64,000 nt of DNA from Octopus sinensis. Lineage: Eukaryota. Both the position numbers and the translations under genes were made by a program. The notes under the pieces were generated by a model. It was not told the DNA's origin. It saw only the letters and a list, made by a program, of their open reading frames with translations, and searched no databases. Location of the stretch: NCBI RefSeq assembly GCF_006345805.1, contig NC_043018.1:17236001-17300000 (forward strand). Reading direction: 5' to 3'. Every line of letters begins with the position of its first letter. Positions within the stretch are counted from its first letter, which is position 1. Shown piece by piece: positions 3,503-61,910 of this stretch.

Positions 3503-3756
3503 TTCTTTTATTCTTTTATTTGTTTCAGTCATTTAACTGCGGTCATGCTGCAGCACCGCCTTTAGTCGAACAAATCCCGGAACTTATTATTTGTAAGCCT
3601 AGTACTTATTCTATAGGGTCTCTTATCCGAACCGCAAAGTTACATGGATGTAAACACACCAGCATCTGTTGTCAAGCAATGTGGGGGACAAACACAGACG
3701 CACAAAAACACACACACACACACATACATACATACATATATATATATATATATTAT

Positions 3757-3809
<53 letters not shown>

Positions 3810-3961
3810 CTATATATATATGACAGACTTCTTTCAGTTTCCGTCTACCAAATCCACTCACAAAGCTTTGGTCGGCCCGAGGTTATACTACGAAAAAAAC
3901 TTGCCCAAGGTGCCGAGCAGTAGGACTGAACCCGGAACCATGTGGTTGGTAAGCAAGCTAA
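3503..3961 (-). mobile_element. tRNA-derived composite SINE (family A) with expanded internal (TA)/(CA) microsatellite
   Basis: Homologous to 25868-26290 and 28147-28560. B-box-like GGTTCAGTCC; 3' tail AAGGCGGTGCTGCAGCATGACCGCAG..ACTGAAAC(AAATAAAAG)n. Confidence 0.85.
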
Positions 3962-6297: not shown

Positions 6298-6741
6298 CGT
6301 GTGTAGCAGTTGATGTGTACTTTTTCAGGCGTGTATATGTGTGTGTATGTTACCAAATAGTGTGCATGTGTATGGTTAACGCTTCTGGGCGAAAGTCATC
6401 TTTGCGTGTTGTGCGTGTGTATGCCTGTTGCATGTTTGTATATATATATAGTCTGTGTTCAGGTATTATGTGATTGTGTGGGTGTGGGAGTGTGAATGAT
6501 GGTGTGTGGTATATGTACTGCGTTGAAGAGTGTGTGTGGCTGCGCGAATAGTGGTATGTGTGGTGATGTTATTGAAGATTGTGTGTGGGTGGGTGCTGAG
6601 AATTGGTCGTTGCTAGTATGTGTGGAGATGGAAGGTGTTCTAGCTGTGTGTGTAATTTTGTGTGAAGGGAATGATGAGTTGAACAGTGGGTGTGGGTGTG
6701 CGTATAGTGGTGCGTGCATGGTGAGGGTACCGAGGTAGGCA

Positions 6742-6862
6742 CATCCTTTCGGGGTTCGATAAATCAAGTACCAGTTAAGCACTGGGGTCGATCTAATCGA
6801 CTTAATTCCTTTGTCTGTTTTTGTTTGTCCCCTCTATATTTAGCCCCTTGTGGGCAATAAAG
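6742..6862 (+). mobile_element. 3' half of Nin-domain tRNA-SINE (family B)
   Basis: CATCCTTTCGGGGTTCGATAAATCAAGTACCAG...TTTAGCCCCTTGTGGGCAATAAAG, homologous to the full copy at 53861-54090. Confidence 0.85.
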
Positions 6863-10535: not shown

Positions 10536-11012
10536 GTATATTCATTGATTTTGGCACTCTTTTCTTGCAAATTGAAATGGAATAGCAGAGTTAGGGTATT
10601 TTAAACATTGAAATCCAATTAATTATATCCATCTTCTTTGTTGCTTGACAGCTCTAACACTAACCATTCAGACAGCCTTCAGCATCTTTAATCCTATATT
10701 GAAGTAATTACATCTATTCTTTGAAAAACCATCCTTTTTCCATACGGTATTTCCACCTACAGACCATATATTAATCACATTTTCGCCTGCAATAATAAAA
10801 ACGAGCACAAACTTAATAATAAAGGTGGTCGGATTTAGAAATAAACAAGGAACAAAACAGAAACAAAATTATATTTTCGGAAAAATTCTTAAATATCGAA
10901 TAAATCGTCGTACTTGAATCTACAATCATCTTCAAACAACCTTCGTTCGGTTTTGGTACATATGTACACACACACATACACATACACACACACATATGTG
11001 TGTATATGTGTT

Positions 11013-11050
<38 letters not shown>

Positions 11051-13540: not shown

Positions 13541-14596
13541 TTGTGCAAAAAATCCAAGATCGGATACTTTTGACCACACCTCGTCCATGAAGGGAAGAAT
13601 AAATTCTTTCTGTTACAGGTAAGTAACTGAAGCATTATAAACAGATATTTGAAGTTGAAAGTTATCAATTTTTTGTCAATATACCCTATGAAAAATCACA
13701 AGGTGAAATGCTTTTAAAGTTCAAAATAAAAGCTATAAAAACATTAAACTGTATCCTCCAGATCGTCTTTATATATCTTTTTCCAGGTTAGAAAACCAGG
13801 CTAGAAAATTCGTTACAACAAAAACTGGGAACGAAAATGAATATTATTACAAAGCATAATACGTCTATAGAAATCCATTGAAGGCATATGAAATCTTTAT
13901 TCAACTAGATTACCAGATGTATGTTAATTCCGTTTCCTTTGAAGCAAATATTACCTACAGGCAACACGTTCGTAACAGTGTTTACCTTTAAATTAAAGTT
14001 GAAATTTTAGATTTTAATAAACAAATCTTTTATAACTCCAATATATGACTTCTTATATTGAACTCACAAGTAATTTCTTCATCTCTACTTGCGCCATTAC
14101 CTTCCTTGAATGTAAAAACCTCCTATGAAAATCCAAATTCTTTAATTGAATAAATACCTTAAAATAATTCTAAAGGCGATGCAAAGATTTAGTTGTAGAA
14201 GAGATTGATTGCAACTGCAAGTTTGGAATCCAATAAAGAACAATCGAACATTTATCACGTTATGTCCCTCTTCCACTTCTTTGCTATACAATGCGTGTCT
14301 CTAGAGTTTGAAATCTCAACTGAATTTCGTCGATAAAGATAATCGAAAACATTTAATTTGTAATTCCGTTTATCTGTGAGAGATTTATTTAACGCACACA
14401 GTGATATCTCAGAACCTTTTCAAAGTGTATTCGGTTTAATTACAACATACGGATATCAGAACTTTGTTTATGTTATGGTCAGTTGTAAAAGACACTGTCA
14501 GGTTAATCTATAAAAGGGAAAAGTTCATTTGTCACGCGAAACCTTTTTCATTTTGTATTAGTAAAACCGTGTCTGAAACTTAATGGTATGTTATAT

Positions 14597-14679
14597 ATTT
14601 CTTTATTACCCACAAGGGGTTAAATATAGAGGGGATAAACAAGAACAGACAAACGAATTCAGTCGATTACATCGACCCC
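14597..14679 (-). mobile_element. 3' end of family B (Nin) SINE
   Basis: ATTTCTTTATTACCCACAAGGGG...GTCGATTACATCGACCCC. Confidence 0.8.
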
Positions 14680-15921: not shown

Positions 15922-16192
15922 GTAAGCTTATATAAATAGAATTTAGCCCAAACAAATATTAGCCGCAGTCAGCCTCTTTTTAATCTGAATTTTTTTTAAT
16001 GTATATCGGTCGTTATCGATGTATTCTTTTATTCTTTCGAATGTTCCTGTCATTTTAATGCGGCTACGCTGAAGCACCACCTTTAGTCGAACTAATCCTA
16101 AAACCAAGAACCTTTCGGCACCCTTTTGTATATATATAATCATATGTATGTATATAGTATGTATGTATGTATGTATGTATATATATATATAT

Positions 16193-17504: not shown

Positions 17505-17705
17505 ACCTACATACATTCATGCAGACATACATACATGCATTTATGCATACATAAATACATAAATACATACATACATACATACATACATACATACATACAT
17601 ACATACATACATACATACATACATGCATACATACATACATACATACATACATACATACATACATACATACATACATACATACATACATACATACATACAT
17701 AAACA
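17505..17705. repeat. (TACA)n tetranucleotide array
   Basis: Directly visible. Confidence 0.95.
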
Positions 17706-25823: not shown

Positions 25824-25867
<44 letters not shown>

Positions 25868-26290
25868 TTCTTTTACTCTTTTATTCTTTTATTTGTTTCA
25901 GTCATTTGACTGCGGACATGCTGGAGCACCGCCTTTAATCGAGCAACTCGACCCCGGGACTTCTTCTTTTGTAAGCCCAGTACTTATTCTATCGGTCTCT
26001 TTTTGCCGAACCGCTAAGTAACGGGGACCTAAACACACCAGCATCGGTTGCCAAGCAATGCTAGGGGGGGGGGCAAACACAGACACACAAATACACACAC
26101 GCATATATATATATATATGCATATATACGACGGGCTTCTTTCAGTTTCCGTCTACCAAATCCACTCACAAGGCTTTGGTCGGCCCGAGGCTATACTAGAA
26201 GACACTTACCTAAGGTGCCACGCAGTGGGACTGAACCCGGAACCATGTGGTTGGTAGACAAGCTACTTACCACACCGCCACTCCTGCGCC
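25868..26290 (-). mobile_element. Full-length family A tRNA-SINE inserted in (TA)n
   Basis: Head GGCGCAGGAGTGGCGGTGTGGTAAGTAGC..GGTTCCGGGTTCAGTCCC, internal (TA)/(TG) tract, tail AAGGCGGTGCTCCAGCATGTCCGCAGTCAAATGACTGAAAC(AAATAAAAG)n. Confidence 0.9.
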
Positions 26291-26317
26291 TATATATATA
26301 TATATATATATATATAT

Positions 26318-27740: not shown

Positions 27741-28146
27741 GGAAGGCAAGCAAAAGCAACATGAACCACGACAACTGCGAAATTTATGAAAATACTAATA
27801 ATTGTTAGTTATTAAATTATGAATGTTAGAATAATTTACTGTATAGTATAAACAACAGCTAACCATGTACATGTCTATAGGAGATTTTATGAAACGACAC
27901 GGATGTGGAATTCAGTTGAATGAGCTAAATCGAGTAATATATGCAGTAGGTAGTTGGCGACGTAGTACATGCCAGATTCCATCTACGCATTAAATTATCT
28001 TCGATGAAACGTAGCACTTACTGCAAAAGGGACGAAAAGCTGAGTAAACGTTTATAGTGAGTCTCAAATAAAAGAGACAGCACGGCACCTACAGTAAGGA
28101 AACTGGTTGCAAAATTAGATCTACTTATATAGGATTATCCAAACTA

Positions 28147-28560
28147 TATTCTGTTACTCTTTTATTCTTTTATTTGTTTCAGTCATTTGACTGCGGCCAT
28201 GCTGGATCACCGCCTTTAATCGAGCAACTCGACCCCGGGACGTATTCTTTTGTAAGCCCAGTACTTATTCTATCGGTCTCTTTTTGCCGAACCGCTAAGT
28301 GACGGGGACGTAAACACACCAGCATCGGTTGTCAAGCAATGCTAGGGGTGGCAAACACAGACACACAAACACACACGCATATATATATGCATATATACGA
28401 CGGGCTTCTTTCAGTTTCCGTCTACCAAATCCACTCACAAGGTTTTGGTCGGCCCGATGCTATAGTAGAAGCCACTTACCTAAGGTGCCACGCAGTGGGA
28501 CTGAACCCAGAACCATGTGGTTGGTAGACAAGTTACTTACCACACAGCCACTCCTGCGCC
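28147..28560 (-). mobile_element. Full-length family A tRNA-SINE with 37-bp flanking direct repeats
   Basis: Closely similar to 25868-26290. Direct repeats at 28110-28146 and 28569-28605 are 35/37 identical. Confidence 0.9.
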
Positions 28561-29151
28561 TATATATACAAACTTAGATCTACTTATACAGGATTATCCA
28601 AACTAGACTCATAGGAAATGCTGGCCAAGGTTATTATTAAGGAAAATAATATCAATCCGTAATAATGCAAATGAGAACAAAATTTGTATGAAAGTTATGT
28701 GACATTATTACATCAGGTTTTATTATATAAAAACCAAGAGTCGACGGAAATATCAAAGTAAACCCGAACCTCGATACTCCTGAATAGTTATCCTTCATTA
28801 TGAAGGGAAAATATAATACGATTTCATATAGAACGAATTTAAAACAAAAAGAAGTTAATTCAGTGCTAGTACGGAGATATTCAACAGAATATTTGTTAGG
28901 TATAGAACGTGAAATTATGGCAATAGAAAATGTAAGAGATTGTTCGTCGGTGAATATGGCTGACGAGGGCGAGCGTACAATTTTTTCAAGAAGCACTTTA
29001 GTTTTTTATGCACTATACGCATTTGATAGATGTAGAACTGTCTAAAATGTCTGGTTCTGCAGACATCTTGAGAACTAAGGGAAACAACATTTCTTGACAG
29101 AGGTGTGTATTTATCCATCTCGCAATACCTTTGTAGCAACCATATGTGTGT

Positions 29152-32565: not shown

Positions 32566-33307
32566 ATAAAATATTAGGGAATAAATCCAAACTTACAGGG
32601 AAAAATCAGATTTAGGATTAAATCCAATTTTATAGTAAAATATTATATTATATTACATTAGAGATAAAACCACTATTAGGCAAATCAAAGAATGAAAAAT
32701 ATAAGCCAATACATAAAATTAATTAATTTATATTATTTTAAATATATATCAAAAGTATTAAAAGTTTAATAAAGGATATATATATATATATATATATAAT
32801 ATATATATATACATATAATTTATATATATATATATATATATATGTGGATGTGTGTGTGTTTGTCTGTGTGTGTGTGTTTGTCTCTGTGTGTGTGTTTGTC
32901 TGTGTGTGTGTGTGTGTGTATGCTCCCATACATACACACACACACACAAGAAGGACAGCCATATGATGTCTCTTAACCGAATCCCAATACTACAGCATTC
33001 ACCAATTTGAGACAATGCTACAGGATATTGAATACGACACGGAACAAGGTCGTTATGGAGCAAAGTCTGCTTGATACGTAGTGTTCGAAGAACGTTTATA
33101 CTGATATCGTTACACCATTAACAAAGAAACAAAAATGAATGTGAAATATCTTCATGAGAAAGGCTTGAGATTAAGGAATATTCAAAGGAAGTGTGGTTAA
33201 TAAATCTATTCTTGTTGTTTGAAGTTAAGAAAATGAATTAGAGACGTTGTTAATGTAGGGTTTGGATAGAGAAAAATCATTTAAACTCATAAACTTCAAT
33301 ATTTATT

Positions 33308-33525
33308 TTTTTATTACCCACAGAGGGATTAAACATAGAGGGGGCAAACAAAGAGATTAAGTCTATTACATCGACCCCAGTCAATAATTGGCACTTATTT
33401 AGTCGACCCTGAAAGGATGAAAGGAATAGTCGACCTTGGCGAAATTTCAACACAGAACGCAGGAACGGACAAAATACGGTAAGCATTTCGCCTGGCGTGC
33501 TAACAATTCTGCCAGCCCGCCGCCC
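33308..33525 (-). mobile_element. Full-length family B (Nin-domain) tRNA-SINE, diverged
   Basis: Head GGCGGCGGGCTGGCAGAATTGTTAGCACGCCAGGCGAAATGCTTA, with Nin core CCTTTCATCCTTTCAGGGTCGAC. Confidence 0.85.
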
Positions 33526-33984
33526 TCCGAAACCTCAATTTTGCACTCTGCAAAAATTGCTTGCTGCCCTATTTTCTTTAATTATTGAAAAGCTCGAAAA
33601 TAACCTTCGTCAATGTTTTTTTACTCTGCTTAGCAGAAATAGTGCCATTATTTTCCTCTGCAAAAAAATAAAAATAGATTATTCCATGGAGTCATTCTGC
33701 ATGTCTATCAATTTATTTGGAAGCTAAATCGACCCTCATTCCGCTTAGTGAGGGATATTTTTGTAGTTACTTTCCCAAAAAAAAGTGGTATACCGTCTTA
33801 AAGTAATGAAATGGTTAAAAGATTCAAGCGAAATGAGGCCAACATGGTGTTGAATTGAAATAATTTGCCATGCTCGCTGGTGCATATATCTTATTATGTA
33901 AAATTACTAGAGCCTTCTCTGATACTCGGTATTGCAGTGCCAGCGACGAGACATATTTTTATTTACATTATTATCGTGTTACCA

Positions 33985-34244
33985 TTTATAATAACAGTGA
34001 ACATGAAAATAAGAAAATAATTTGTAAATAAAGAAATAAAACTCTATATATATACATACATACATATATATATATATATGTATATATGTATATATGTATA
34101 TATGTATATATATATATTATATATATATATATATATATGTATGTATATATATATATATGTATATATAATATGTATATATATATATTATATATATAAATAT
34201 ATATATATATATGCATGTATATATATATATATATATATGCATGT

Positions 34245-34283
<39 letters not shown>

Positions 34284-34385
34284 GTATATATATATTATAT
34301 ATATATATATATGTATATATATGTATATATATATATGTATATATGTATATATATATATACATATATATGTATGTATATACATATT
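33985..34385. repeat. Long (TA)n-based microsatellite
   Basis: Directly visible. Confidence 0.9.
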
Positions 34386-36202
34386 CCTCAGGAATGTCGA
34401 ACTGTGATTAGTCATTCGGTTTATAAAAATTACAGCAATTACAGCGCGATAGAAGCGAAGCAGGAAATAGAACGCGAAAGAAGTAATGTTAGATGTGTGT
34501 ACAATATACAACTATTGTATTTGTGGACGTAAAAAGATTTGTTTAGAACACTTAAATACCACAAACTGTAATAACAGTATTTTGTTATGTGAGACAGCAC
34601 AGATTCTGCCAGTGATGTATGCACCAACTTATATCCTGTCATGACGTTAATTTAAAACTAGAAATAGAATGTTTCGTAGACTAATGACTTGTAGACACTT
34701 GTGATGGACATATTTTAACTCTATTTCGACTGATGAGCCACTGTTTTAAAAGGTGGTGAGACAATATATGAAGTCGTACTAAAGTGTAGCTGATTTATCA
34801 TTAGCCACCCACTTAAACTAATTTTAATTAACTAATGGGTGTACCTCTACATGAACATTCAAATGGTAGAAAGAAAAATGCGAATTGCTGTCTAGTCAAA
34901 CCTTGCTAGCATGGGTAAGGGCATCTTATCTTCTTAGTAATAAAAGTAAACTTTCTGTTCAATTCTGATCCGATTGATTATGTTTCTACAGCACGAAATA
35001 TTAAAGCTAGTAAAATAATACAGTATTGAACACTTGATTCAATAGTTTGTAATAAGTGTTTATGAAATAAGCGACAACTTGAATTTGTTTCTTTGTGAAG
35101 CAGTACTCGATAAATCATCTTCAGTATTTGATTGGTACTCTATTTCATTCAGTCCGGAAAAAAGCTAAGCAATGTTGACCTCGGTCCAAATTGAATTCAG
35201 AATATAAAGAGATGGAAGAAATAAGGCAAAATATGCAGTTCTATATTTAAGAGATGAGGAATTATGTACATTATTTACATTTGACGGATATTCGTCCTCA
35301 TCTTGTTTGTTGTTAACACAACACTTCGGCTTAGTTACCCTCCAGACTTCATTAGGTGTCTTGGGAAATTTCGAACCTCGGTTCTCCTCCCTAAGGTATT
35401 CTTCGATGTTATTATTATTATTTTATTATTATTATTATTCAGGTCACTGCTCGGAATCTTATGGTTAGTAGCTCGCGCTCTTAACCACTACGCCATATAT
35501 CCGTGGACAATTATGGAGTGAAGTTTACGGCTTATAAATCTTATATTTTCCTATCCTTCCTTAATGCAGGTTTTCGTATGCTATTCATATCTGCACTCGG
35601 TCTGCTTAGGAGGTTGTTGTGTCCTAGCATATGTGCTGCTTCATTTAGTTTTCGTATTTTCCAGAGGTGGTCTCCATTTTTCCATACATGATCAGCTGTA
35701 CCCGATTTATCAATACCTCCTCGTGTCGCAGCTTTGCGATGTTTGTCTAACGTTATTTTGAAGGGGTGGCATGTTTCGACTTTGTGTAACCTACGACAGC
35801 TGCATGAGATGGATTACATGCAGTTTTTGTAATATTCTCTTCTATTGGTGGTTTTACTCGAAGGAGATATTTGCGAAGTGTTGTATTACTCTTGAATATT
35901 GTCCTGATATCATATGGGCCGCATATTTTTTGTATATTTACGGAGAGGCCTTTCACATAGGGTAGACAGACTGGAGACAGTTTATTAGTTTCATCCTCTC
36001 TTTTCTTCATAATTGGAGTGGATAGAAGGTTTTGTGGGTAGTTGTTACTTAAAAGATTTTTATTGAGCTTGATCATTTCTTCGTTGTATGTATCACGATC
36101 GCTACTTATTTTCTTTGCTCGAATTTTTAGGCACTGAACATTACGGAAGAATAGGAAAATATTAGATTTATAAGCCCTGAAATTCACTCCATAATTGCCC
36201 AC

Positions 36203-37769: not shown

Positions 37770-38600
37770 ATATAAACTACGGAAATATGTCTCCTATCAA
37801 TAACTAAGGAGATCCTTGCTCGCATTCTACTGAACAGACTAAGTATATCTGTCCAAAAATCTCTCCTATTTCTTTACTACCCACAAGGGGCTAAACACAG
37901 AGAGGACAAGCAAGGACAGACAAACAGATTAAGTCGATTATATCGACCCCAGTGCGTAACTGGTACTTATTTAATCGACCCAGAAAGGATGAAAGCAAAA
38001 GTCGACATCGGCGGAATTTGAACGCAGAACGTAGCGGCAGACGAAATACCACAAAGCATTTCGCCCGCCGTGCTAACGATTCTGCCAGCTCGCCGCCTTA
38101 CCAAATATCTTTCCTGAAACAGTGTAGCTACCGTTGTGGTAAAAGTAATGAGGACATCCCCTTCTTCCTTCACCAAATTCAGGAAATATGCATTAGGCAG
38201 AACATGCCAAGGCATGATGAGTTCATGAACTTCACAAAGGCTTTTGACATGTTATCTCGTGATGAAATTTAACTGGATCTCAAGGAGCATGGATGTCCTC
38301 CAAGTTTCATCAATAAGGGAATGCAGGTATTTGTAGTACAAGATAGCGATAGGTCGGGCGAGTTGATATTGACAAACAGGGTGCGTACTCGCTCCACTAC
38401 TGTTTTCCATCTATCACGCTGCAGTGTTGGAAGCCCCCTTTGAAGATGTTAGATGAAGGTATTCACATCCAGACGCAGCATGATGCTGACCTGTTCAATG
38501 CTGCATAGTATAAAGCCAAGATGCCCACTACGAAGTTCCTAGTGAGAGTGATGCTGTTCGCTGATAATAGTACGGTGGTTGCCCTCTGCTGTGAAGATAC
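37770..38600 (+). mobile_element. RTE (BovB-like) LINE RT fragment, interrupted by a SINE
   Basis: NY..SLLSI..EILARILLNRL / FPETQCSYRCGKSNEDIPFFLHQIQEICIRQN..EFMNFTKAFDMLSR..LKEHGCPP / KQGCVLAPLLFSIY..DEGIHIQTQHDADLFN..KAK...VRVMLFAD. Confidence 0.85.
37868..38100 (-). mobile_element. Full-length family B (Nin) SINE nested in the RTE fragment
   Basis: 15-bp TSD CCAAAAATCTCTCCT (37853-37867) / CCAAATATCTTTCCT (38101-38115). Confidence 0.9.
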
Positions 38601-38693
38601 GTGGAAACTGGAAGATAACTCTGCCAGAGCTGTTGTACAGAGTTATCTTCCAGATAACTCTACCAGATCTGTACAACAGCTCTGGCAGAGTTA

Positions 38694-38745
<52 letters not shown>

Positions 38746-38780
38746 ATATATAGTATATATATGTATATATATATATAATG

Positions 38781-38814
<34 letters not shown>

Positions 38815-38859
38815 TGTATAATATATAATAATATATATATGTATATATATATATATTAT

Positions 38860-38895
<36 letters not shown>

Positions 38896-38950
38896 ATAGA
38901 TATATGTATATATATATGTATTATATATATATATGTATTATATATGTATA

Positions 38951-39020
<70 letters not shown>

Positions 39021-40750
39021 AAAGTTTGTTTGGTAAAGCACGTGGGTGAATATATAAAAAATAGTAAAGTGTGAAAAAACGACAGAAGGATTAAATGTTA
39101 AAAAATATATATATTTGTGTCAAAATGTCTGGAGAATATTGGAAAAATTTTTTTTTCCCTTTCCTTAAAATGACATAATTTAAAAATTTTTAAAGAAATT
39201 ACCGGTTTCGCGTGTAGCTTTTCAAATTTCTTGTGACGTTATGTTTATATTGCATGGAATTATCGTTGTTTTTATTTCCAGGAGATTTCTAAATAAGGGG
39301 CGGTAGTGAGTGATTTTTTCCGGTGTAGGGGAGATAATCGCTTAAAATTTTTTTTTCCCTTTTCCTTGTTAATTTCTCTGTGTCAGTATGTTCGGATGGT
39401 TGAGTCTGGGTTTGTACTTTTCAATGAAGAATGTTTCCTTGTTCAGTCTCATTTGTGTTGATGATCCGAAAATAATACACAGGCACCTAATGAACCAGCA
39501 GGACACCATACGCACCCAAACCAACCCAACAAAAAGAAAAAGGAAACGTTTGGAATACAAACCTGCACAACAAAAACTCACCTTCTGGAACATGATAATA
39601 AAAATTCCAACAAAGCAGATATCTACGAGGGATGGATAAACTCAACACCAATTATCCCCACGCAAATTCCAGATAAAATTAATTCCTAACGAGCCTGACG
39701 GACAGAGATCTATTAGAGAAAAGTCAGCTCTGTTCAATTTTAAATCAGAAATAGAGCTTCTAAGACTCAGGGCCTCCACAAATGAAGAAAAACTTAAAAG
39801 CATAGACGAGGAGATGCACAATCTAATACTAAAATATACCGAGGGACAACCCCTCGATAATACATTGGATCACTGGAAGGATTCCTGTGAGAGAGAAGAG
39901 AGAAATTCTCTCCTACGCTGGGAGAAAAACATGGACTTCTTCCAAAAATATAGTGAAACCTTCAAAAATGAATAGGGTACAAATAATCCCTTCCTTAAGA
40001 AAATTACAATAAATAAAAAAGAAAAACCTAACAACCCACGAACAACCCCCAACTATCCTCATACCTAAAAACAGAAATCACCCCCAACCAACCTTTCCAA
40101 ACCACGCTAGACCTAACAGGGAACTAGCTGAAAGAGGACGCGTCTATGAAAGAATTACACCAAAAACAGAACAAACCAACAACATCCTAATACCAGACCC
40201 AACCACCATATAGCCAATACGACACTAGGATAGAAATTCAGGAAATATGCATTAGGCAGAACATGCCAAGGCATGATGAGTTCATGAACTTCACAAGGCT
40301 TTTGACATGTTATCTCGTGATGAAATTTAACTGGATCTCAAGGAGCATGGATGTCCTCCAAGTTTCATCAATAAGGGAATGCAGGTATTTGTAGTACAAG
40401 ATAGCGATAGGTCGGGCGAGTTGATATTGACAACAGGGTGCGTACTCGCTCCACTACTGTTTTCCATCTATCACGCTGCAGTGTTGGAAGCCCCCTTTGA
40501 AGATGTTAGATGAAGGTATTCACATCCAGACGCAGCATGATGCTGACCTGTTCAATGCTGCATAGTATAAAGCCAAGATGCCCACTACGAAGTTCCTAGT
40601 GAGAGTGATGCTGTTCGCTGATAATAGTACGGTGGTTGCCCTCTGCTGTGAAGATACGTGGAAACTGGAAGATAACTCTGCCAGAGCTGTTGTACAGAGT
40701 TATCTTCCAGATAACTCTACCAGATCTGTACAACAGCTCTGGCAGAGTTA

Positions 40751-40789
<39 letters not shown>

Positions 40790-40899
40790 TATATATATAT
40801 ATATGTATATATATATGTAATATATATATAAATGTATATTATATATATATTATATATGTATATATATATATATGTATATATATATTATAATATATGTTA

Positions 40900-40987
<88 letters not shown>

Positions 40988-41004
40988 GTATATATATATG
41001 TATA

Positions 41005-41096
<92 letters not shown>

Positions 41097-42313
41097 TAAG
41101 AAAGTTTGTTTGGTAAAGCACGTGGGTGAATATATAAGAAAATAGTAAAGTGTGAAAAAAACGACAGAAGGATTAAATGTTAAAAAATATATATATTTGT
41201 GTCAAAATGTCTGGAGAATATTGGAAAAATTTTTTTCCCTTTCCTTAAAATTACATAATTTAAAAATTTTTAAGAAATTACCGGTTTCGCGTGTAGCTTT
41301 TCAAATTTCTTGTGACGTTATGTTTATATTGCATGGAATTATCGTTGTTTTTATTTCCAGGAGATTTCTAAATAAGGGGCGGTAGTGAGTGATTTTTTCC
41401 GGTGTAGGGGAGATAATCGCTTAAAATTTTTTTTTCCCTTTTCCTTGTTAATTTCTCTGTGTCAGTATGTTCGGATGGTTGAGTCTGGGTTTGTACTTTT
41501 CAATGAAGAATGTTTCCTTGTTCAGTCTCATTTGTGTTGATGATCCGAAAATAATACACAGGCACCTAATGAAACACAGCAGGACACCATACGCACCCAA
41601 ACCAACCCAACAAAAAGAAAAATAGGAAACGTTTGGAATACAAACCTGCACAACAGAAACTCACCTTCTGGAACATGATAAAAAATTCCAACAAAGCATA
41701 TCTACGAGGGATGGATAAACTCAACACCAATTATCCTCCCACGCAAATTCCAGATAAAATTAATTCCTAACGAGCCTGACGGACAGAGATCTATTAGAGA
41801 AAAGTCAGCTCTGTTCAATTTTAAATCAGAAATAGAGCTTCTAAGACTCAGGGCCTCCACAAATGAAGAAAAACTTAAAAGCATAGACGAGGAGATGCAC
41901 AATCTAATACTAAAATATACCGAGGGACAACCCCTCGATAATACATTGGATCACTGGAAGGATTCCTGTGAGAGAGAAGAGAGAAATTCTCTCCTACGCT
42001 GGAGAAAAACATGGACTTCTTCCAAAAATATAGTGAACCTTCAAAAATGAATAGGGTACAAATAATCCTTCCTTAAGAAAATTACAATAAATAAAAAAAA
42101 AAACCTAACAACCCACGAACAACCCCCAACTATCCTCCATACACTAAAAAAGAATCACCCACAACCAACCTTTACAAACCACGCTAGACCTAACAGGGAA
42201 CTAGCTGAAAGAGGACGCGTCTATGAAAGAAATTACACCAAAAACAGAACAAACCAACAACATCCTAATACCAGACCCAACCACCATATAGCACAATACG
42301 ACACTAGGATAAG
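38175..42313. repeat. Tandem segmental duplication of about 2.06 kb (unit 1 38175-40233, unit 2 40234-42313)
   Basis: Both units contain RTE fragment + fold-back + (CT)/(TA)n + inverted pLTR + PLE 5' region. The junction has AAAT microhomology. Confidence 0.9.
39018..39471 (-). mobile_element. Inverted 3' pLTR copy of the Neptune-type PLE (duplicated at 41098-41550)
   Basis: Reverse complement of 44804-45215, plus about 30 extra terminal bases. Confidence 0.9.
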
Positions 42314-44906
42314 AAATACACCACACACAAATCACTACTACCCCATGAACCAAAACTACTGGTCCCCACTAAACACAAGACAAACGCAAAGAACCACTAT
42401 GTCAAGCAACATCCCACATACAAGAAGTTCGAAACAAAAATATTCCCCATAAAGAAATTTTACACACACCACAAGCATTACAACCATAGATTCCCACACA
42501 CACACAACGATCGGAGGCAACAATACCACCACTCCCCCGACCAAATACCACACAACCTCACAGACAACTCATACAAACAAAATTACACCCAACATTTTTT
42601 AGCCAGGACCAGGGACACCAGGACACAGGCTGGAACCTAGTAATAAGGAAAAACCGAAGATAATCAATCTTTCAACCAAACCTCTTTCTAACATAAAAAT
42701 TGACATCCTCGCAAAAGGGCTCAATTTACACCAACTCCACGCAGAGCAAACCTAAATGAACTCAAGGATAATATAACAGAATTTTGCAGAAAATTAAGAC
42801 TAGCAGAAGCATCAAACAGTTCAATACTGAAGATGAATCACTAGTCAAGAACAAAAGTGAACACATCCCACACAGAGGAAGAAATAAAGATCTTGACGAA
42901 TTCTGTAACCACATTGAGAACTTCCCCTACCATACTATACATAAACAGAAAGCTAACCCAAATTTTAACACTACACAATGGAAAGAACTGATAGAACTCC
43001 AAAATGATGAAGATATAACCATTAAGGAAGCGGACAAGGGAATGCAGTTGTAATAATGGATACATCATACTACAGAAATCTTGTAATTTCCTTGCTTGAT
43101 GAAGACCTACATTATGAAAAAATTACCAACTACACCCCACAAAAAATAATGAAAACTCTATCTTCACTAATTAAAACCCATGAAAAGGAACTGACAACCA
43201 AAGAGATTGATTTCCTAACAAACTTAAATACAAACCTAGCCTTTTCTATGTCTGCCAAAAATTCATAAAAGTCAAATTATAAATGAAACCATTAAAAAAT
43301 CACCAAAGACATACATACACACACCTAATCCGGGGGACCTAAAACTACGACCCATTGTAGCTGGCCCAACCTGTGAAAACACAGACTAAGTCTACTTATG
43401 GACATCCTCTTGAAACCCTTCCTTAAACATATCGATAGCCATATCAGAGATGACTTAGATATGTTAAACCACCTTCCAAAAAAAAACCAAGGAAGAAACA
43501 ATCCTGGTTTCATTTGATGTAGTCAACTTGTATACCAGTATACCTCATAATTATGGACTGGAGGCAATACAATTCTGGTTAGACCAATTTCCGGAAGAAA
43601 TACCAAAAAGGATCAGTAAGGAATTCATTACTAAATCAATTGAATTCATCCTACACAATAACCACTTCATGTTTGACAATACATTTTACCGTCAAAAATC
43701 CGGAATTGCTATGGGTACAAGGGCAGCACCAGTCATTGCGAACTTAACAATGGGATACATGGAAATAATCATTTACCAGGAATCTCTATCAATCTTTGGA
43801 AACTCCCTCTCTCAATACATAAAAGAGAATTGGAAACGATTCCTAGACGATTGTTTCATTCTCTGGAATGAAAACATAAAAATTTAAAAACCTATTGAAC
43901 AGCATAAACCCAAATATACAGTTCAGAATGGAATAGAACCAAAAGGAGCTCCAGTTCTTGGATATACTAATTAAAAAAATTAACCTTAAAATAGAAACAG
44001 ACATTTTTTACAAAGCCACAGACGCCAAACAATACCTTCTTTTTAATTCATGCCACCACAAGACACACTAAAACAACATCCCCTTCAACCTTGCAAGAAG
44101 GATATGCACAATAGTGTCAGAACAAAATACCAGGAACTTTAGACTGCAAGAACTCAAAAACACCCTAATTGACAGATATTACCCAGCTCAACTCATAGAG
44201 GATGGGATCAGACGTGCAACAGAAAATCAACATAGAAACTTTAAGAAAAGTTCAACACAACAACACACCTTCCCGAAAATACTACCTTACATATCTACAT
44301 ACAACCCCAGAAACAAAGAAGCCTTCACCATCATCACCCAAATTTACCAATACTTCATAAAAACCAAAATTAAAGGAAATTCTAACATACACCAAATCAT
44401 TAAAAGCTACAAACAGCCTAAATCACTTAAAAAGATTCTCACAAAGGCAAAATTGTTTTCTAAAATTACGGCTGCAAAAGTAAAAAATGTGGGTAGATCG
44501 AACTGTGCAACATGTCCTAACCTATTGGAAGGATCAGAATTCTTCTTTAAAGAGGGACAGAAATTTAAGATCAAATCTAACTTTACTTGTGCCTCTGAAA
44601 ACATAATTTATGTTATTAAATGCTCGGGCTGCCACCACCAGACTACGTGGGTTCCACGGGACTATCACTCAGGCGCAGATGCACACTGCATCGACAACAG
44701 ATTGCATTCCCAGAATATAGAATGATACCTTTAGTGAGCACATTGAGAAATGCGCAAAGCAACTACTGCCACAATTTTTAATCTTCCCATTTTACCAATG
44801 TGCTTTCGGATCATCAACACAAATGAGACTGAACAGGGAAACATTCTTCATTGAAAAGTACAAACCCAGACTCAACCATCCGAACATACTGACACAGAGA
44901 AATTAA
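41551..44906 (+). pseudogene. PLE pol ORF (RT + GIY-YIG), broken by multiple single-base frameshifts
   Basis: Track ORFs 42784-43053, 43056-43268, 43528-43887 and 44114-44725 are consecutive pieces of one protein of about 1100 aa. Confidence 0.85.
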
Positions 44907-45043
44907 CAAGGAAAAGGGAATAAGATGTTTTAAACGATTATCTCCCCTACACCGGAAAAAATCACTCACTACCTCCCCTTATTTAGAAATCTCCTGGAAA
45001 TAAAAACAAAGATAATTCCATGCAAATAAACATAACGTCACAA

Positions 45044-45078
45044 GAAATTTGAAAAGCTACCGCGAAACCGGTAATTTC
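45044..45078 (+). ncRNA. Minimal hammerhead variant with U3-A8 core (copies also at 39195-39230 and 41274-41309, minus strand)
   Basis: GAAAT-TTGAAAA-GC-TAC(A)C-GC-GAAA-CCGG-TA-ATTTC: 5-bp stem I, 2-bp stem II, palindromic ACCGGT stem III, GUA site. Confidence 0.6.
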
Positions 45079-45212
45079 TTTAAAAATTTTAGAATTATGT
45101 CAATTTAAGGAAAGGGAAAAAAAATTTTCCCATATTCTCCAGACATTTTGACACAAATATATATATTTTTTAACATTTAAGCCTTCTGTCGTTTTTTCAC
45201 ACTTTACTATTT

Positions 45213-45282
<70 letters not shown>

Positions 45283-45314
45283 TATATGTATATATATAAT
45301 GTATATAATATATG

Positions 45315-45407
<93 letters not shown>

Positions 45408-46350: not shown

Positions 46351-46502
46351 TATTTAATTACTACCCACAAGGGGCTAAACGCAGAGGGGACAAACAAGGA
46401 TATACAAAGGGATTAAGTCGATTATCTCGACCCCAGTGCGTACTGGCACTTAATTTATTAACTCTAAAAGGATGAAACACAAAGTCGACCACGGCTAAAT
46501 TT
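46351..46502 (-). mobile_element. 5'-truncated family B SINE
   Basis: CTACCCACAAGGGGCTAAAC...TCGACCCCAGTGCGTACTGG...AAGGATGAAA..AAAGTCGACC. Confidence 0.85.
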
Positions 46503-51873: not shown

Positions 51874-52445
51874 AAGAGGTCGAGCTGGCAGAAACGTTAG
51901 CACGCCGGGCGAAATGCTTAGCGGTATTTCGTCTGCCGTTACGTTCTGAGTTCAAATTCCGCCGAGGTCGACTTTGCTTTTCATCCTTTCGGGGTCTATA
52001 AATTAATTACCAGTTACGAACTGGGGTCGATATAATCGACTTAATCCGTTTGTCTGTCCTTGTTTGTCCCCTCCGTGTTTAGCCCCTTGTGGGCAGTAAA
52101 GAAATAGGTATTTCGTCTGCCGTTACGTTCTGAGTTCAAATTCCGCCGAGGACGGCGTTGCTTTTCATCCTTTCGGGGTCTATAAATTAATTACCAGTTA
52201 CGCACCGGGTTCGATATAATCGGCTTAATCCGTTTGTCTGTCCTTGTTTGTCCCTTCTATGTTTAGTCCCTTGTGGGTAGTAAAGAAATAGGCATTTTTT
52301 TCTGTCTTTATGTTCTGAGTTCAAATTCCATCATGGTTGTCTTTGCTTTTTTATCCTTTTGGTGTCGATAAACTAAGCAACAGTCGATCGTATTGTCTGG
52401 CCCCCTCTCCCAAAATTTGGACCCTGTACCTAGAGTAGAAAAGAT
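51874..52445 (+). mobile_element. Head-to-tail trimer of family B SINE units (51874-52106, 52107-52290, 52291-52445)
   Basis: Units 2 and 3 start at the internal GG(T/C)ATTT site directly after the GAAATA 3' end. Confidence 0.85.
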
Positions 52446-53318
52446 TCTTATAAAAGCAATATCCATCTACCTATAGAAGTATAGAATTTTAGAACTGCAG
52501 AATATTTTGCTCGATCGGGTGGCTTAAGTTTGCAGTTAAACATCGTACCAAGTTGTATTCGATCATGCTGATTATTAGATTTCAATAGATTTGTGTTATT
52601 ATTTACATTGTTGATTCTAGGTGGTGTACGAATGTATGTTTGTGTGCGTGTGTGTATGTGTGTTTGTATAAAGCCACAAACGTGTTTGCTCTTATACGCA
52701 GTCATATCTACACTTGCATATTGACACAAATACATATTTATACCATTATGTACTTACATATATATGTGCTACGTAACTTATTTCGTTTTCCCCTTTTTGG
52801 TACGAGAATGAAAATAGAATTTCTCTTGACATATTTTGATGCGAGGAACACGAATCAGTTATGCATATATTAGGCACGAATGAATTATGCACGAATCAAT
52901 AATGCAGGTAGGAGTCGAAATGTTATTTCAGTGACTAAATAATTCAGACGCACACTGAAAATGGAGGACTTTAACTAATTCAGTTCAATATCGATGTACG
53001 GAATATAACGGCCATGTAAGAGTTAATTGTATGTAATTATATATTGTGAATAAATAATGTTATTGAATACTTAATACTTGTCCCATCATTAATTCATTGT
53101 GATGCATTAGCCAGTCTTGTATTCGATGGGAAAGATTATTTGTTGCTGATCAGTACAATACAACATTGAAAAATGTCTGAATTTATCTCCTGAGTTAAGC
53201 AGACATATAATGTGAATAGAATGTTATTTGTATGAGAATATCATTTCCTATCAACTGAGTTTTATTATTTTAGTTAATACATTTAATGGTCTTTTTATTA
53301 ATCAAATGCACAGCAATG

Positions 53319-53439
53319 ACTTACGGCCATATCACGTTGAAAGCACCGGTTCTCGTCCGATCACCACAGGTAAGCAACATCGAGCCTAGTTAGTACTTAG
53401 ATGGGTGACCGTTTGGGAAACCTAGGTGCTGTAAGCATT
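53319..53439 (+). pseudogene. Full-length 5S rRNA-derived sequence (about 120 nt)
   Basis: ACTTACGGCCATATCACGTTGAAAGCACCGGTTCTCGTCCGATCACC..GTAAGCAAC..CGAGCC.AGTTAGTACTTAGATGGGTGACCG..TGGGAA...GGTGCTGTAAGCATT is an unmistakable metazoan 5S, with some substitutions and no oligo-T terminator. Confidence 0.9.
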
Positions 53440-53508
53440 CCATTCCTCTTTAAATGGCGGTGCCCCAGCATGGCCACAGCTCATGAGCTGAAACTAGAAT
53501 CAATCAAT
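53319..53508 (+). mobile_element. Putative 5S-headed SINE (SINE3-like) with the family A 3' tail
   Basis: 5S is followed after about 11 nt by TAAATGGCGGTGCCCCAGCATGGCCACAGCTCATGAGCTGAAAC and AATCAATCAAT; a possible short CAATG TSD lies at 53314-53318 / 53505-53509. Confidence 0.7.
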
Positions 53509-53639
53509 GCTCTTGTATGCTTGCATACCTCTGTCATTCAAACAAAATAATTCTTAGAAAGAACGTCATATGACTGGTTCGTTGCCAGTCATCTTCATAT
53601 CGAATTCTGTGCACCAGGAAAGTATACGAGAGGAGCAAG

Positions 53640-53826
53640 ACGTATAAGCTCAGTGACTACCATATCAATAAAACAAATATAAATCTTGTTGCATACGTAA
53701 TGTTGTGAATAATATGCGAAAGATGTGGGAATCACCACATCGGTAACACATTCCGGAAACTTCACATCAGGCTTAAGGATCACACATCTGCGCTTATTCG
53801 AGTAAGAAAACATACAATGATTGGAG
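53640..53826 (+). mobile_element. Degenerate PLE GIY-YIG fragment
   Basis: INLVAYVML*IICERCGNHHIGNTFRKLHIRLKDHTSALIRVRKHTMIG resembles NVVY.I.C.RC.K.YIGET.R.L..R..EH. Confidence 0.55.
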
Positions 53827-53860
53827 TAGGTATATCCTTTCAATATACATGCCTATTTCG

Positions 53861-54090
53861 AAGGCGGTGGGCTGGCAGAAACGTTAGCACGCCGGGCGAA
53901 ATGCTTAGCGGTATTACGTCTGCGTTACGTTGTGAGTTCAAATTCCGCCGAGGTCGACTTTGCCTTTCATCCTTTCGGGGTCGATAAATTAAGTACCAGT
54001 TACGCACTGGGGTCGGTGTAATCGACTTAATACCTATGTCTGTCCTTGTTTGTCCCCTCTGTGTTTAGCCCCTTGTGGGTAATAATGAAA
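53861..54090 (+). mobile_element. Full-length family B (Nin-domain) tRNA-SINE
   Basis: Nin core GTCGACTTTGCCTTTCATCCTTTCGGGGTCGATAAATTAAGTACCAG; perfect 17-bp direct repeat TAGGTATATCCTTTCAA at 53827-53843 / 54091-54107. Confidence 0.92.
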
Positions 54091-55262
54091 TAGGTATATC
54101 CTTTCAACTGAGACAATGGCAGGTTCAGAATGTAGACTATTCTTATTAATCAAGAGAAATTGGAAATGAAGACGGGACCGAACTGAATACCACAGATCTG
54201 CATTTCTAACTTCTTTGATTTACTTATCATTCAGCTCTTAACATTCCTATTTATTTCTCACAAAGATTTACCACACAGCTGCAACATATTTTTACGAAAT
54301 ATCATATCTATTGACGAATATTATATAAAAATTCTACTATTGTTCAGCGACACTTCTAGTCACCTCTTTCGCAACAGTATTAAGGTATCATGTCACGTTG
54401 TGTAATAATTCTCCTGTTTACATACCGTACTACCTGCTGCTTCTGATAGCATCTAACTCAGCCAATTACAATTCCTAAAATGGAAATATAAGCAATGATG
54501 TAGTCACAGCACACCAGAATGATCTGCCGATAAAATTTCTGATTTTTCTGTCTCCAATTACAAATAAGGGAATATTTTTCTAAATGTTTATAGTCATTTC
54601 ACGCATTGACATTAATTTTCGCATGTTTAATAAAACTTAACGTGTATTGCACAAAGATCGTTGCAAATATTTGTCATTAAAAAAAATTCAACGCTTCAAT
54701 GAATTTATAATATACTTCTAAATATTCATATATTGTAGAAATACCTATAAAACAATTTCTTAACATTCGATATCACTTTACATAATCAGAATCTAAGAAA
54801 GTTCATTACATTGCTCTCAATGCCATCGTTATAGTAAATGAATTATGAAAGTATTATGAATGTGTCACAAATGCCCCGTCGGCGAGCTGCCAGCGTTTGC
54901 TAATTTTGAATATATGCTGTTTAACCTTTATCATATAAATGTGTTTCTAAATTTAATATCAATTGATTAATATGAATTTAAATCCAGAGGTCTTGCATGT
55001 TTAAAAATCTGAAGTTTCAAAAAATATATGTATTACATACATATAAAAAGGATGATCTGTAAGTGGTCATCTATTATGCTAGAAGAAGATCCTCTATGGA
55101 TTTTTACCCAGTACATTTATATATGTATATTGTACACAGTATAAAGATGTGATCTACTAGACACGACTCTCCAAAAGTGAACTTTTACTGATATCCATCT
55201 CTCACTGGATGGAGTATTTCCATTCTCTATCTTACCTTGAAGGAACAGTAAACAACGAATAC

Positions 55263-61770: not shown

Positions 61771-61910
61771 CCTATTTCTTTACTACCCACAAGGGGCTAA
61801 ACACAGAGAGAACAAACAAGAACAGACAAAAGGATTAAGTCGATTATATCGACCCCAGTGCGTAACTGGTACTCATTTAATCGACCCCGAAAGAATGAAA
61901 GGCAAAGTCG
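61771..61910 (-). mobile_element. 5'-truncated family B SINE, tail-to-tail with the family A fragment
   Basis: CCTATTTCTTTACTACCCACAAGGGG...GACCCCGAAAGAATGAAAGGCAAAGTCG. Confidence 0.9.

What the first reader, a model, noticed from the sequence alone, without database searches (positions are those of the whole stretch)
53319..53508. 5S rRNA-headed SINE (SINE3-like) sharing the 3' tail of the local tRNA-SINE family
Seen: a complete 5S sequence of about 120 nt lacks an oligo-T terminator and runs into GGCGGTGCCCCAGCATGGCCACAG..GAGCTGAAAC plus (ATCA)n-like repeats. That tail is homologous to the family A tail (GGCGGTGCTCCAGCATGGCCGCAG..GACTGAAAC). The copy is solitary, not in a 5S array. Knowledge: 5S-derived SINEs are rare compared with tRNA-SINEs and use the internal type 1 Pol III promoter plus a LINE-derived tail. 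Inference: a dispersed cephalopod SINE3 family, or a one-off template-switch chimera. I cannot tell whether it is already catalogued.
Basis: partly seen in the sequence, partly recalled or inferred. Interest (0 to 1): 0.72.

Follow-up and report, generated by a model that had tools for sequence, protein, structure and literature searches.

The report
5S-headed SINE copy in Octopus
A full-length 5S rRNA sequence with no terminator is fused to the short structured 3' end of an octopus LINE, which is the standard build of a 5S-derived SINE (SINE3 class); it is an ordinary, probably dead retroposon copy, and I could not count other copies directly.

Summary
Window 53319-53437 (+) is a full-length 5S rRNA match (Rfam 100.5 bits), the only one in 64 kb. 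It has no oligo-T terminator. After an 18-nt linker comes a ~40-nt box that also ends the local tRNA-like SINE ("family A").

New here: the box is the 3' end of a LINE. A 5'-truncated CR1/L2-type LINE in Octopus sinensis (L005:13075-13800) ends in the same box. The 5S element's tail matches that LINE variant (~87%) better than family A's tail (82.6%). The box folds into two hairpins supported by compensatory changes across 13 copies.

So the element has a Pol III head plus a LINE recognition tail, which is the SINE3 architecture. Whether it belongs to a multicopy family could not be tested, because no searchable DNA collection held cephalopod DNA. 82 kb of other octopus DNA contained no second copy. 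A 2026 repeat annotation of O. vulgaris lists four "5S" SINE families covering 9.8 Mb. By my estimate that is about one copy per 55 kb, which fits one copy in this window.

Most likely it is an old copy of such a family (0.75). A one-off template-switch chimera remains possible (0.17). Interest is low.

The parts
53319..53437 (+). 5S rRNA-derived head, full length, carrying the region of the internal type 1 Pol III promoter. The box C core GATGGGTGACCG is intact.
   Evidence: Rfam RF00001, 100.5 bits, model 1-120/120. 86.6% identical over 97 nt to a bona fide 5S gene in L003. About 4 non-canonical pairs are marked in the cmscan alignment.
53438..53455 (+). 18-nt linker TTCCATTCCTCTTTAAAT. It has no T4 terminator. 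Its last ~10 nt loosely resemble the pre-box CTCGATTAAA of family A.
   Evidence: Read directly; alignment A1; no T>=4 run.
53455..53476 (+). Tail hairpin 1 (UGGC.GUGC CCCA GCAU.GCCA).
   Evidence: RNA fold. 7 pairs counted over 13 tails, 92.3% paired, with a C-G to U-A compensatory change at pair 9-24.
53477..53490 (+). Tail hairpin 2 (CAGCU CAUG AGCUG), the LINE-type variant.
   Evidence: RNA fold. Pairs 31-38 and 32-37 are C-G/U-A in the 5S element and the L005 LINE but U-A/C-G in family A, so both changes are compensatory.
53491..53509 (+). AAAC plus a short simple-repeat terminus TAGAATCAATCAATG. This is the probable 3' end of the insertion.
   Evidence: Read directly. Aligns with ...AAGCTACAAT(AT)n of the LINE and ...AAAC(AAATAAAAGAAT)n of family A.
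53314..53318 (.). Possible 5-bp target-site duplication CAATG, repeated at 53505-53509. Not significant on its own.
   Evidence: TSD scan: best unrestricted match scores below the null mean (74% of random controls score at least as high). CAATG is the only repeat abutting the 5S start.
28150..28568 (-). Family A tRNA-like SINE copy with the A-type tail box, shown for comparison. It is flanked by a 37-bp target-site duplication (28110-28146 and 28569-28605).
25864..26298 (-). Family A copy with the A-type tail box.
3504..3960 (-). Family A copy with the A-type tail box.
16022..16090 (-). Isolated, diverged A-type tail fragment (5'-truncated copy).

Best explanation
This is one retroposed copy of an octopus 5S rRNA-headed SINE (SINE3 class). 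A source copy is transcribed by RNA polymerase III from the promoter inside the 5S sequence. Because the 5S terminator is missing, the transcript runs on through a short linker into a ~55-nt tail that copies the 3' end of a CR1/L2-type LINE: two adjacent hairpins followed by a short simple repeat. The LINE's reverse transcriptase recognises that tail, primes on nicked target DNA and copies the RNA into a new site. Family A and at least one other SINE lineage use the same tail module, so several Pol III heads share one LINE. Shown here: the full-length 5S head, the missing terminator, the tail's homology to a LINE 3' end, the conserved two-hairpin structure, and the non-random adjacency of head and tail. 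Inferred: transcription, mobilisation by that LINE, and membership of a multicopy family. This particular copy is probably old and inactive, because it shows no clear target-site duplication and has no downstream terminator.
For: Full-length 5S at 100.5 bits, solitary. No T4 run after it. The tail box occurs 13 times in 146 kb of octopus DNA, always at the 3' end of a retroposon. One of these is the 3' UTR end of a 5'-truncated LINE whose C-terminal reading frame carries ...LDYCSQLWSP......LERRRERYAVIYIWKIL... and ...VPDEPT (L005:13075-13800). The 5S element's tail shares GCCCC and the hairpin-2 variant AGCUC..GAGCU with that LINE (about 87% identity by hand count on alignment A2) against 82.6% to family A. 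The two-hairpin structure has 92.9% of cells paired, 3 pairs with compensatory change, and 0 of 500 shuffles reach the covariation score. The chance of a box starting within 30 nt downstream of a given site on the same strand is about 0.0013. Literature: O. vulgaris has 4 '5S' SINE families covering 9,831,953 bp (PMC13282606 Suppl. Table 1). At ~190 bp each that is about 50,000 copies, or one per ~55 kb, which fits one per 64-kb window. The giant squid has ~24,000 5S-derived loci described as 'likely SINEs' (PMC6962438). HaSE3/HaSE1 and CoeSINE5/CoeSINE4 are 5S-head and tRNA-head pairs sharing one LINE tail (PMC5786205).
Against: No second copy of the 5S-tail junction was seen in 82 kb of O. 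sinensis and O. bimaculoides DNA. About 1.5 would be expected at the literature density, so zero is not decisive. No predicted protein spans such a junction. There is no significant target-site duplication. The 18-nt linker matches nothing else. I could not compare this element with the published '5S' consensus sequences. Part of that 9.8 Mb may be 5S rDNA arrays: 7 'recent insertions' cover 42 kb.
Confidence: 0.75

Rival explanations
1. One-off chimeric retropseudogene. While copying a LINE or SINE RNA from its 3' end, the LINE reverse transcriptase switched template to a cellular 5S rRNA after ~55-70 nt. This would give a single 5S-plus-tail insertion that never became a source gene, like the U6, 5S and 7SL chimeras made by L1 in mammals (Buzdin et al. 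2003, cited in PMC4758252).
For: Same order of parts: a full-length small RNA at the 5' end and a 5'-truncated retroposon 3' end. Only one copy was seen in 146 kb. No junction-spanning relatives were found in the protein databases. This copy has no terminator within 880 nt, so it is a poor source gene.
Against: The homology to other tails starts at about the same 5' boundary as in the SINE families (a few nt before the box) rather than at an arbitrary truncation point. The 18-nt linker matches neither the sampled LINE 3' UTR nor family A upstream of that boundary. Published annotation gives 5S SINEs 0.35% of the O. vulgaris genome, so a random 5S-plus-tail element is far more likely to be a family member than a rare chimera.
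Confidence: 0.17
2. Two independent events: a 5S retropseudogene or orphan 5S gene, with a severely 5'-truncated LINE or SINE copy that landed 18 nt downstream by chance.
For: Nested and adjacent insertions are common in this repeat-rich window. Isolated tail fragments do exist, for example 16022-16090.
Against: Same strand, head-to-tail order and an 18-nt gap have a chance probability of about 0.001 at the observed box density. The 5S lacks the terminator that an orphan gene would keep.
Confidence: 0.04
3. A functional 5S rRNA gene or variant, with the 'tail' being the normal 5S rDNA spacer.
For: The Rfam score is high (100.5 bits, against 108.1 for a bona fide gene in L003) and helix I is kept by paired changes.
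Against: No terminator. It is solitary, not in an array. The downstream box is a retroposon 3' module found on a LINE and on SINEs. About 4 non-canonical pairs and changes in the intermediate element and box C.
Confidence: 0.01

Closest known systems
SINE3 / 5S rRNA-derived SINEs (zebrafish SINE3, Kapitonov & Jurka 2003; lepidopteran HaSE3, PxSE4/5; coelacanth CoeSINE5)
   Same: A full 5S-derived head with an internal type 1 Pol III promoter, no terminator after the head, and a 3' tail copied from a LINE. Like HaSE3/HaSE1 and CoeSINE5/CoeSINE4, the tail is shared with a tRNA-headed SINE in the same genome (PMC5786205; PMC10886601).
   Different: The host is a cephalopod mollusc. [quoted passage not shown] There is no body domain: head, 18-nt linker and tail total only ~190 bp. 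The partner is CR1/L2-type by C-terminal motifs, whereas HaSE3 and CoeSINE5 use RTE tails. Copy number was not measured here.
UnaSINE1/UnaL2 of the eel, and other 'stringent' LINE-SINE pairs (Kajikawa & Okada 2002)
   Same: SINE and LINE share a short conserved 3' stem-loop followed by a short repeat, which the LINE reverse transcriptase needs for recognition. The octopus tail shows the same logic: two hairpins with compensatory changes plus a simple-repeat end. A comparable stem-loop with compensatory changes was reported for bivalve BivaCORE-SINE2 and L2 (PMC4824008).
   Different: No sequence relationship is claimed. The octopus tail has two hairpins. Function in retrotransposition is inferred, not assayed.
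Template-switch chimeric retrogenes (U6-L1, 5S-L1 and similar; Buzdin et al. 2003)
   Same: A full-length small Pol III RNA joined at its 3' end to the 3' part of a LINE or SINE. This mechanism is also the proposed origin of new SINE heads (PMC4824008; PMC4758252).
   Different: Those chimeras are single-copy, made by L1 and end in poly(A). Here the tail starts at the module boundary used by the other SINE families, and 5S SINE families are annotated in the genus.
Octopus tRNA-derived SINEs (OK, OR1, OR2 of Ohshima & Okada 1994; the 'tRNA-Deu' and 'tRNA-Core' classes of genome papers)
   Same: Family A in this window is an abundant ~420-bp tRNA-like SINE, with 3 copies in 20 kb of L001, and it uses the same tail module.
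   Different: Different head and body. Its tail is the A-type variant (hairpin 2 CAGUC..GACUG). I did not test which named family corresponds to family A.

Membership tests
SINE3 (5S rRNA-derived SINE) | Head derived from 5S rRNA and covering the internal promoter (box A, intermediate element, box C) | tested here: met
   Rfam 5S_rRNA 100.5 bits, model 1-120/120. Box C core GATGGGTGACCG is intact. There is one change in the intermediate element (CCTAGT) and changes at the box C edges.
SINE3 (5S rRNA-derived SINE) | No Pol III terminator between head and tail, so the transcript includes the tail | tested here: met
   Only TT after the 5S, TTT in the linker, and no T>=4 run for 880 nt.
SINE3 (5S rRNA-derived SINE) | 3' tail homologous to the 3' end of an autonomous LINE in the same genome or genus | tested here: met
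   The L005:13075-13800 LINE fragment (O. sinensis) ends in GGTGGTGCCCCAGCATGACCGCAGCTCTGAGCTAAAGCTACAAT(AT)n. It is ~87% identical to window 53456-53500 by hand count and shares the hairpin-2 compensatory variant.
SINE3 (5S rRNA-derived SINE) | Many dispersed copies with different flanks | not testable with these tools
   Metagenome contigs and viral contigs gave no match even to the abundant family A tail, and genome contigs gave only a chance Pseudomonas hit. 0 further copies in 82 kb of octopus loci. Indirect support: 4 '5S' SINE families covering 9.8 Mb in O. vulgaris.
SINE3 (5S rRNA-derived SINE) | Target-site duplication flanking the insertion | tested here: inconclusive
   Only CAATG (5 bp) abuts both ends. 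The best unrestricted match is no better than random controls. One family A copy has a clear 37-bp duplication; the others are unclear or lie in microsatellites.
Template-switch chimeric retropseudogene | Small RNA fused directly to an arbitrarily 5'-truncated LINE, SINE or mRNA; single copy | tested here: inconclusive
   An 18-nt linker of unknown origin lies between the 5S end and the tail homology. The tail starts at the module boundary shared by the SINE families. Single-copy status could not be tested.
Functional 5S rRNA gene / 5S rDNA array | Tandem array or at least an oligo-T terminator directly after the gene | tested here: not met
   One 5S in 64 kb and no terminator. The L003 5S gene, for contrast, has TTTT 15 nt after its end.
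CR1/L2-group LINE (partner element L005:13075-13800) | C-terminal motifs of the CR1/L2/Jockey group after the RT domain (..YC.Q.WSP.., ..QR.FTK.., ..LE.RR.R..I..WKIL..), then a short 3' UTR ending in a hairpin plus a simple repeat | tested here: inconclusive
   The motifs are visible in the three-frame translation, and the 3' UTR and tail were read. The clade assignment rests on my own knowledge of these motifs. No phylogeny or library comparison was possible, and only the last ~700 bp of the LINE is present.

The most novel reading that the evidence does not exclude
This would be the first molecularly described 5S-headed SINE family of a mollusc or cephalopod. It would be a minimal ~190-bp element (5S head, 18-nt linker, tail) that rides on a two-hairpin 3' cassette of a CR1/L2-type LINE, and that same cassette has been captured separately by tRNA-headed SINE lineages in Octopus. 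Published work lists 5S SINEs in O. vulgaris and 5S-derived loci in the giant squid only as annotation classes. A 2024 review names no mollusc among taxa with described 5S-SINEs.
Probability: 0.4. Interest if true: 0.3.

Novelty: new member of a known kind. Interest (0 to 1): 0.2.

Why it matters
The value is mainly for annotation. The element shows that one LINE 3' recognition module (two hairpins plus a short repeat) serves several Pol III heads in Octopus, a genus where SINEs make up about 12% of the genome. It also names a candidate LINE partner for the dominant tRNA-like SINE. Dispersed 5S hits in cephalopod genomes, such as the ~24,000 in the giant squid, should be read as SINE copies rather than rRNA genes. 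None of this changes the current understanding of SINE biology.

Tried and rejected
1. Counting junction copies by DNA pattern. GATGGGTGACCG-N{30,60}-GGCGGTGNNNCAGCATG gave 0 hits in metagenome contigs, genome contigs and viral contigs. The control patterns for the abundant family A tail also gave 0 in metagenome contigs and viral contigs, and only a chance Pseudomonas hit in genome contigs. These collections therefore show no sign of octopus DNA, and the zeros say nothing about copy number.

2. Protein proxies for other copies (spurious ORFs through the junction).
- The +1 frame ORF 53401-53550 found no candidate.
- The minus-frame peptide with stops mended found only P0014, an ORF over an unrelated 5S gene in ENA metagenome contigs L003/L004.
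- The full HMMER scan of 1.84 billion representatives gave one marginal, irrelevant hit.

3. Sampling octopus DNA through Penelope-like RT homologues. This gave L001, L005 and L006 (O. sinensis) and L002 (O. bimaculoides), 82 kb in all. They hold many family A copies and the LINE tail but no 5S. L007 (ENA) is not an octopus that carries family A. A window ORF was not on record.

4. Empty-site paralogue. The flanks 52385-53318 and 53495-53855 are unique in the sample.

5. Target-site duplication search. Nothing beyond CAATG; the first script timed out.

6. Literature. No paper prints these sequences. No hits for 'cephalopod + 5S-derived' or '5S-Deu-L2 + octopus'. Albertin 2015 is not held.

7. 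Rejected readings: a functional 5S gene or rDNA spacer (no terminator, solitary, tail is a retroposon module), and a tail borrowed from family A (the hairpin-2 variant is the LINE's).

Full report
**Observation**

The described feature is present at the stated coordinates.
- Rfam's 5S_rRNA model matches window 53319-53437 (+) over its whole length (positions 1-120) at 100.5 bits, against a gathering score of 38.
- It is the only family reaching gathering score in the 64 kb and the only 5S match even at E<=1. The other 136 matches at that threshold are below-gathering hits, nearly all miRNA models in AT/GT-rich repeat tracts.
- ARAGORN finds no tRNA gene in the window.
- The 5S ends ...GCTGTAAGCATT and continues CCATTCCTCTTTAAAT without an oligo-T terminator. 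No run of four or more T occurs in the 880 nt after the 5S start.
- From 53456 comes GGCGGTGCCCCAGCATGGCCACAGCTCATGAGCTGAAAC, then TAGAATCAATCAATG.
- The 20-nt box pattern occurs four times in the window against 0.01 expected by chance.
- Tail identity to family A is 82.6% over 46 nt.

**Organism and extra material**

- An RT reading frame in the window (43468-43884) is 82% identical to an Octopus sinensis protein and 74% to an O. bimaculoides protein, so the window is from an Octopus.
- Those homologues let me fetch 82 kb of O. sinensis (L001, L005, L006) and O. bimaculoides (L002) DNA.
- Family A is abundant there, with three copies in the 20 kb of L001.

**What the tail is**

- Scanning the window and these loci for the box gives 13 occurrences, each at the 3' end of a retroposon.
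- One occurrence, L005:13116 (minus strand), is not a SINE. Upstream of it lies a frameshifted reading frame with ...LDYCSQLWSP......QRTFTKKI...LERRRERYAVIYIWKIL... and ...LFNILPKSLRDL...FLSRVPDEPT. A stop codon follows, then a ~70-nt 3' UTR ending in GGTGGTGCCCCAGCATGACCGCAGCTCTGAGCTAAAGCTACAAT(AT)n.
- From my own knowledge, these are the C-terminal motifs of the CR1/L2/Jockey group of LINEs. I could not test the clade by phylogeny.
- The 5S element's tail agrees with this LINE end at about 87% of positions (hand count on alignment A2). It shares GCCCC and the CAGCTC..GAGCT segment with the LINE, where family A has GCTCC and CAGTC..GACTG.
- All versions fold into two adjacent hairpins.
- Counted over the 13 tails, 92.9% of pair cells are standard pairs. 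Three of the 12 pairs show changes on both sides, no shuffle out of 500 reaches the observed covariation score, and sliding the partners collapses pairing to 19-45%.
- The two compensatory changes in hairpin 2 (U-A/C-G in family A, C-G/U-A in the LINE) are shared by the LINE and the 5S element.
- The tail is therefore a structured LINE 3' module, and the 5S element carries the LINE's own variant rather than a copy of family A's.

**Is the head-tail adjacency chance?**

At 13 boxes per 146 kb on two strands, the chance of a box starting within 30 nt downstream of a given point on the same strand is about 0.0013. Head and tail were therefore joined in one RNA-mediated event, not by two independent insertions.

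**Family or one-off?**

- The DNA collections open to pattern search (metagenome, prokaryote genome and viral contigs) gave no junction match. They also gave no match to the abundant family A tail, apart from one chance hit in a Pseudomonas genome. Those zeros are uninformative.
- Searching for spurious ORFs across other junction copies found nothing relevant.
- The 82 kb of other octopus DNA holds no 5S.
- The flanks of the element are unique in the sample, so no empty-site paralogue exists.
- No significant target-site duplication is present. Only CAATG abuts both ends, whereas one family A copy has a clean 37-bp duplication.

The literature tips the balance toward a family.
- The curated repeat annotation of O. 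vulgaris xcOctVulg1.2 lists a SINE class '5S' with four consensus families covering 9,831,953 bp (PMC13282606, Supplementary Table 1).
- At ~190 bp per copy that is roughly 50,000 copies, or one per ~55 kb. That fits one copy in this 64-kb window, and it makes zero copies in 82 kb unremarkable (about 1.5 expected).
- The giant squid genome paper reports ~24,000 5S-derived loci described as 'likely SINEs' (PMC6962438).
- Caveats: I could not compare sequences with those libraries. Part of the 9.8 Mb may be 5S rDNA, since 7 'recent insertions' cover 42 kb.

**Mechanism (inferred from the anatomy and from established SINE biology)**

1. A source copy is transcribed by Pol III from the internal 5S promoter.
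2. With no terminator, the transcript includes the linker and the tail.
3. The CR1/L2-type LINE's reverse transcriptase recognises the two-hairpin tail, as shown experimentally for UnaL2/UnaSINE1 (Kajikawa & Okada 2002).
4. It then copies the RNA into the genome by target-primed reverse transcription.

The founding event of such a family is itself thought to be a template switch from LINE or SINE RNA to 5S rRNA (PMC4824008; PMC4758252). The rival 'chimera' reading therefore differs only in whether the product went on to multiply. This copy lacks a downstream terminator and a clear target-site duplication, so it is probably an old, silent copy. Its head still scores 100.5 bits, against 108.1 for a bona fide 5S gene in L003, with about four non-canonical pairs.

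**Comparison with known elements**

- The build is that of SINE3.
- A 5S-headed and a tRNA-headed SINE sharing one LINE tail is already described for HaSE3/HaSE1 in Helicoverpa and CoeSINE5/CoeSINE4 in coelacanth (PMC5786205).
- The differences here are the host, the partner clade (CR1/L2-type rather than RTE), and the minimal structure without a body domain.
[quoted passage not shown] Cephalopod 5S SINEs appear only as annotation classes.

**Verdict**

Family status is probable but not shown here. This is an ordinary repeat element, a new member of a known kind that is probably already present in unpublished or automated octopus repeat libraries. Interest is 0.2.

Noticed in passing
window 28110-28146 and 28569-28605: The family A SINE copy at 28150-28568 (-) is flanked by an unusually long 37-bp target-site duplication (35 of 37 identical).
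   Followed up: partly
L005:13075-13800 (-), O. sinensis CM016879.1: 5'-truncated LINE 3' end with a frameshifted C-terminal ORF, CR1/L2-type motifs and a 3' UTR ending in the tail box plus (AT)n. It is a candidate autonomous partner for family A and the 5S element. No copy of it is present in the window (tblastn).
   Followed up: partly
L005:16462-16530 (-) and L005:17917-17985 (-): Two further SINE-like elements with a third tail variant (GCCCC in hairpin 1, CAGUC UAAY GACUG in hairpin 2) and an extra segment before the box. The tail module therefore serves at least three SINE lineages.
   Followed up: no
window 53855-54100 (+); also 51881-52330, 37865-38107, 33304-33532, 46351-46502, 61771-61910, 6742-6860, 14596-14679: A second abundant ~230-bp SINE-like repeat ('family B', starting GAAGGCGGTGGGCTGGCAGAAACGTTAGCACGCC) lies 350 bp downstream of the 5S element. 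It recurs throughout the window and in L002, L005 and L006, and appears as two tandem copies at 51881-52330.
   Followed up: partly
window 38175-42320 and 44804-45407: A 2.1-kb tandem duplication (38175-40240 against 40234-42320, 96% identical) plus a 640-bp inverted copy at 44804-45407 surround an RT-coding element (RVT_1 hit at 43468-43884). The region 42234-44857 is 81% identical to L001:8722-11362. The layout resembles a Penelope-like element with terminal repeats; that class assignment rests on my own knowledge.
   Followed up: partly
window 5880-6470 (+): C-terminal fragment of an RTE/BovB-like LINE ORF (...AFEM*CHRRILRVSWTERRTN...) with one in-frame stop. It runs into a microsatellite, and no tail box follows it.
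   Followed up: no
window, family A heads (e.g. 28500-28568 -): The tRNA-like heads of family A are detected neither by ARAGORN nor by Rfam's tRNA model at E<=1, although they carry a GGTTCAGTCCC box-B-like motif.
   Followed up: no
window, many sites (e.g. 10956-11037, 17516-17688, 34044-34386): In E-value mode Rfam returns about 136 below-gathering matches to mir-297, mir-3149, mir-466 and similar models. They lie in tracts whose six-frame translations are dominated by TA/TG-type repeats. They look like low-complexity artefacts rather than miRNA genes.
   Followed up: partly
L003:2148-2266 (-) and L004:2050-2168 (-), ENA metagenome contigs: A bona fide-looking 5S gene (108.1 bits, TTTT 15 nt downstream) from an unidentified eukaryote shares the TTAGATGGGTGACCG variant with the octopus element. 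That variant is therefore not necessarily decay.
   Followed up: no
window 53319-54200: No run of four or more T occurs on the + strand for 880 nt, in DNA that is 67% A+T.
   Followed up: no
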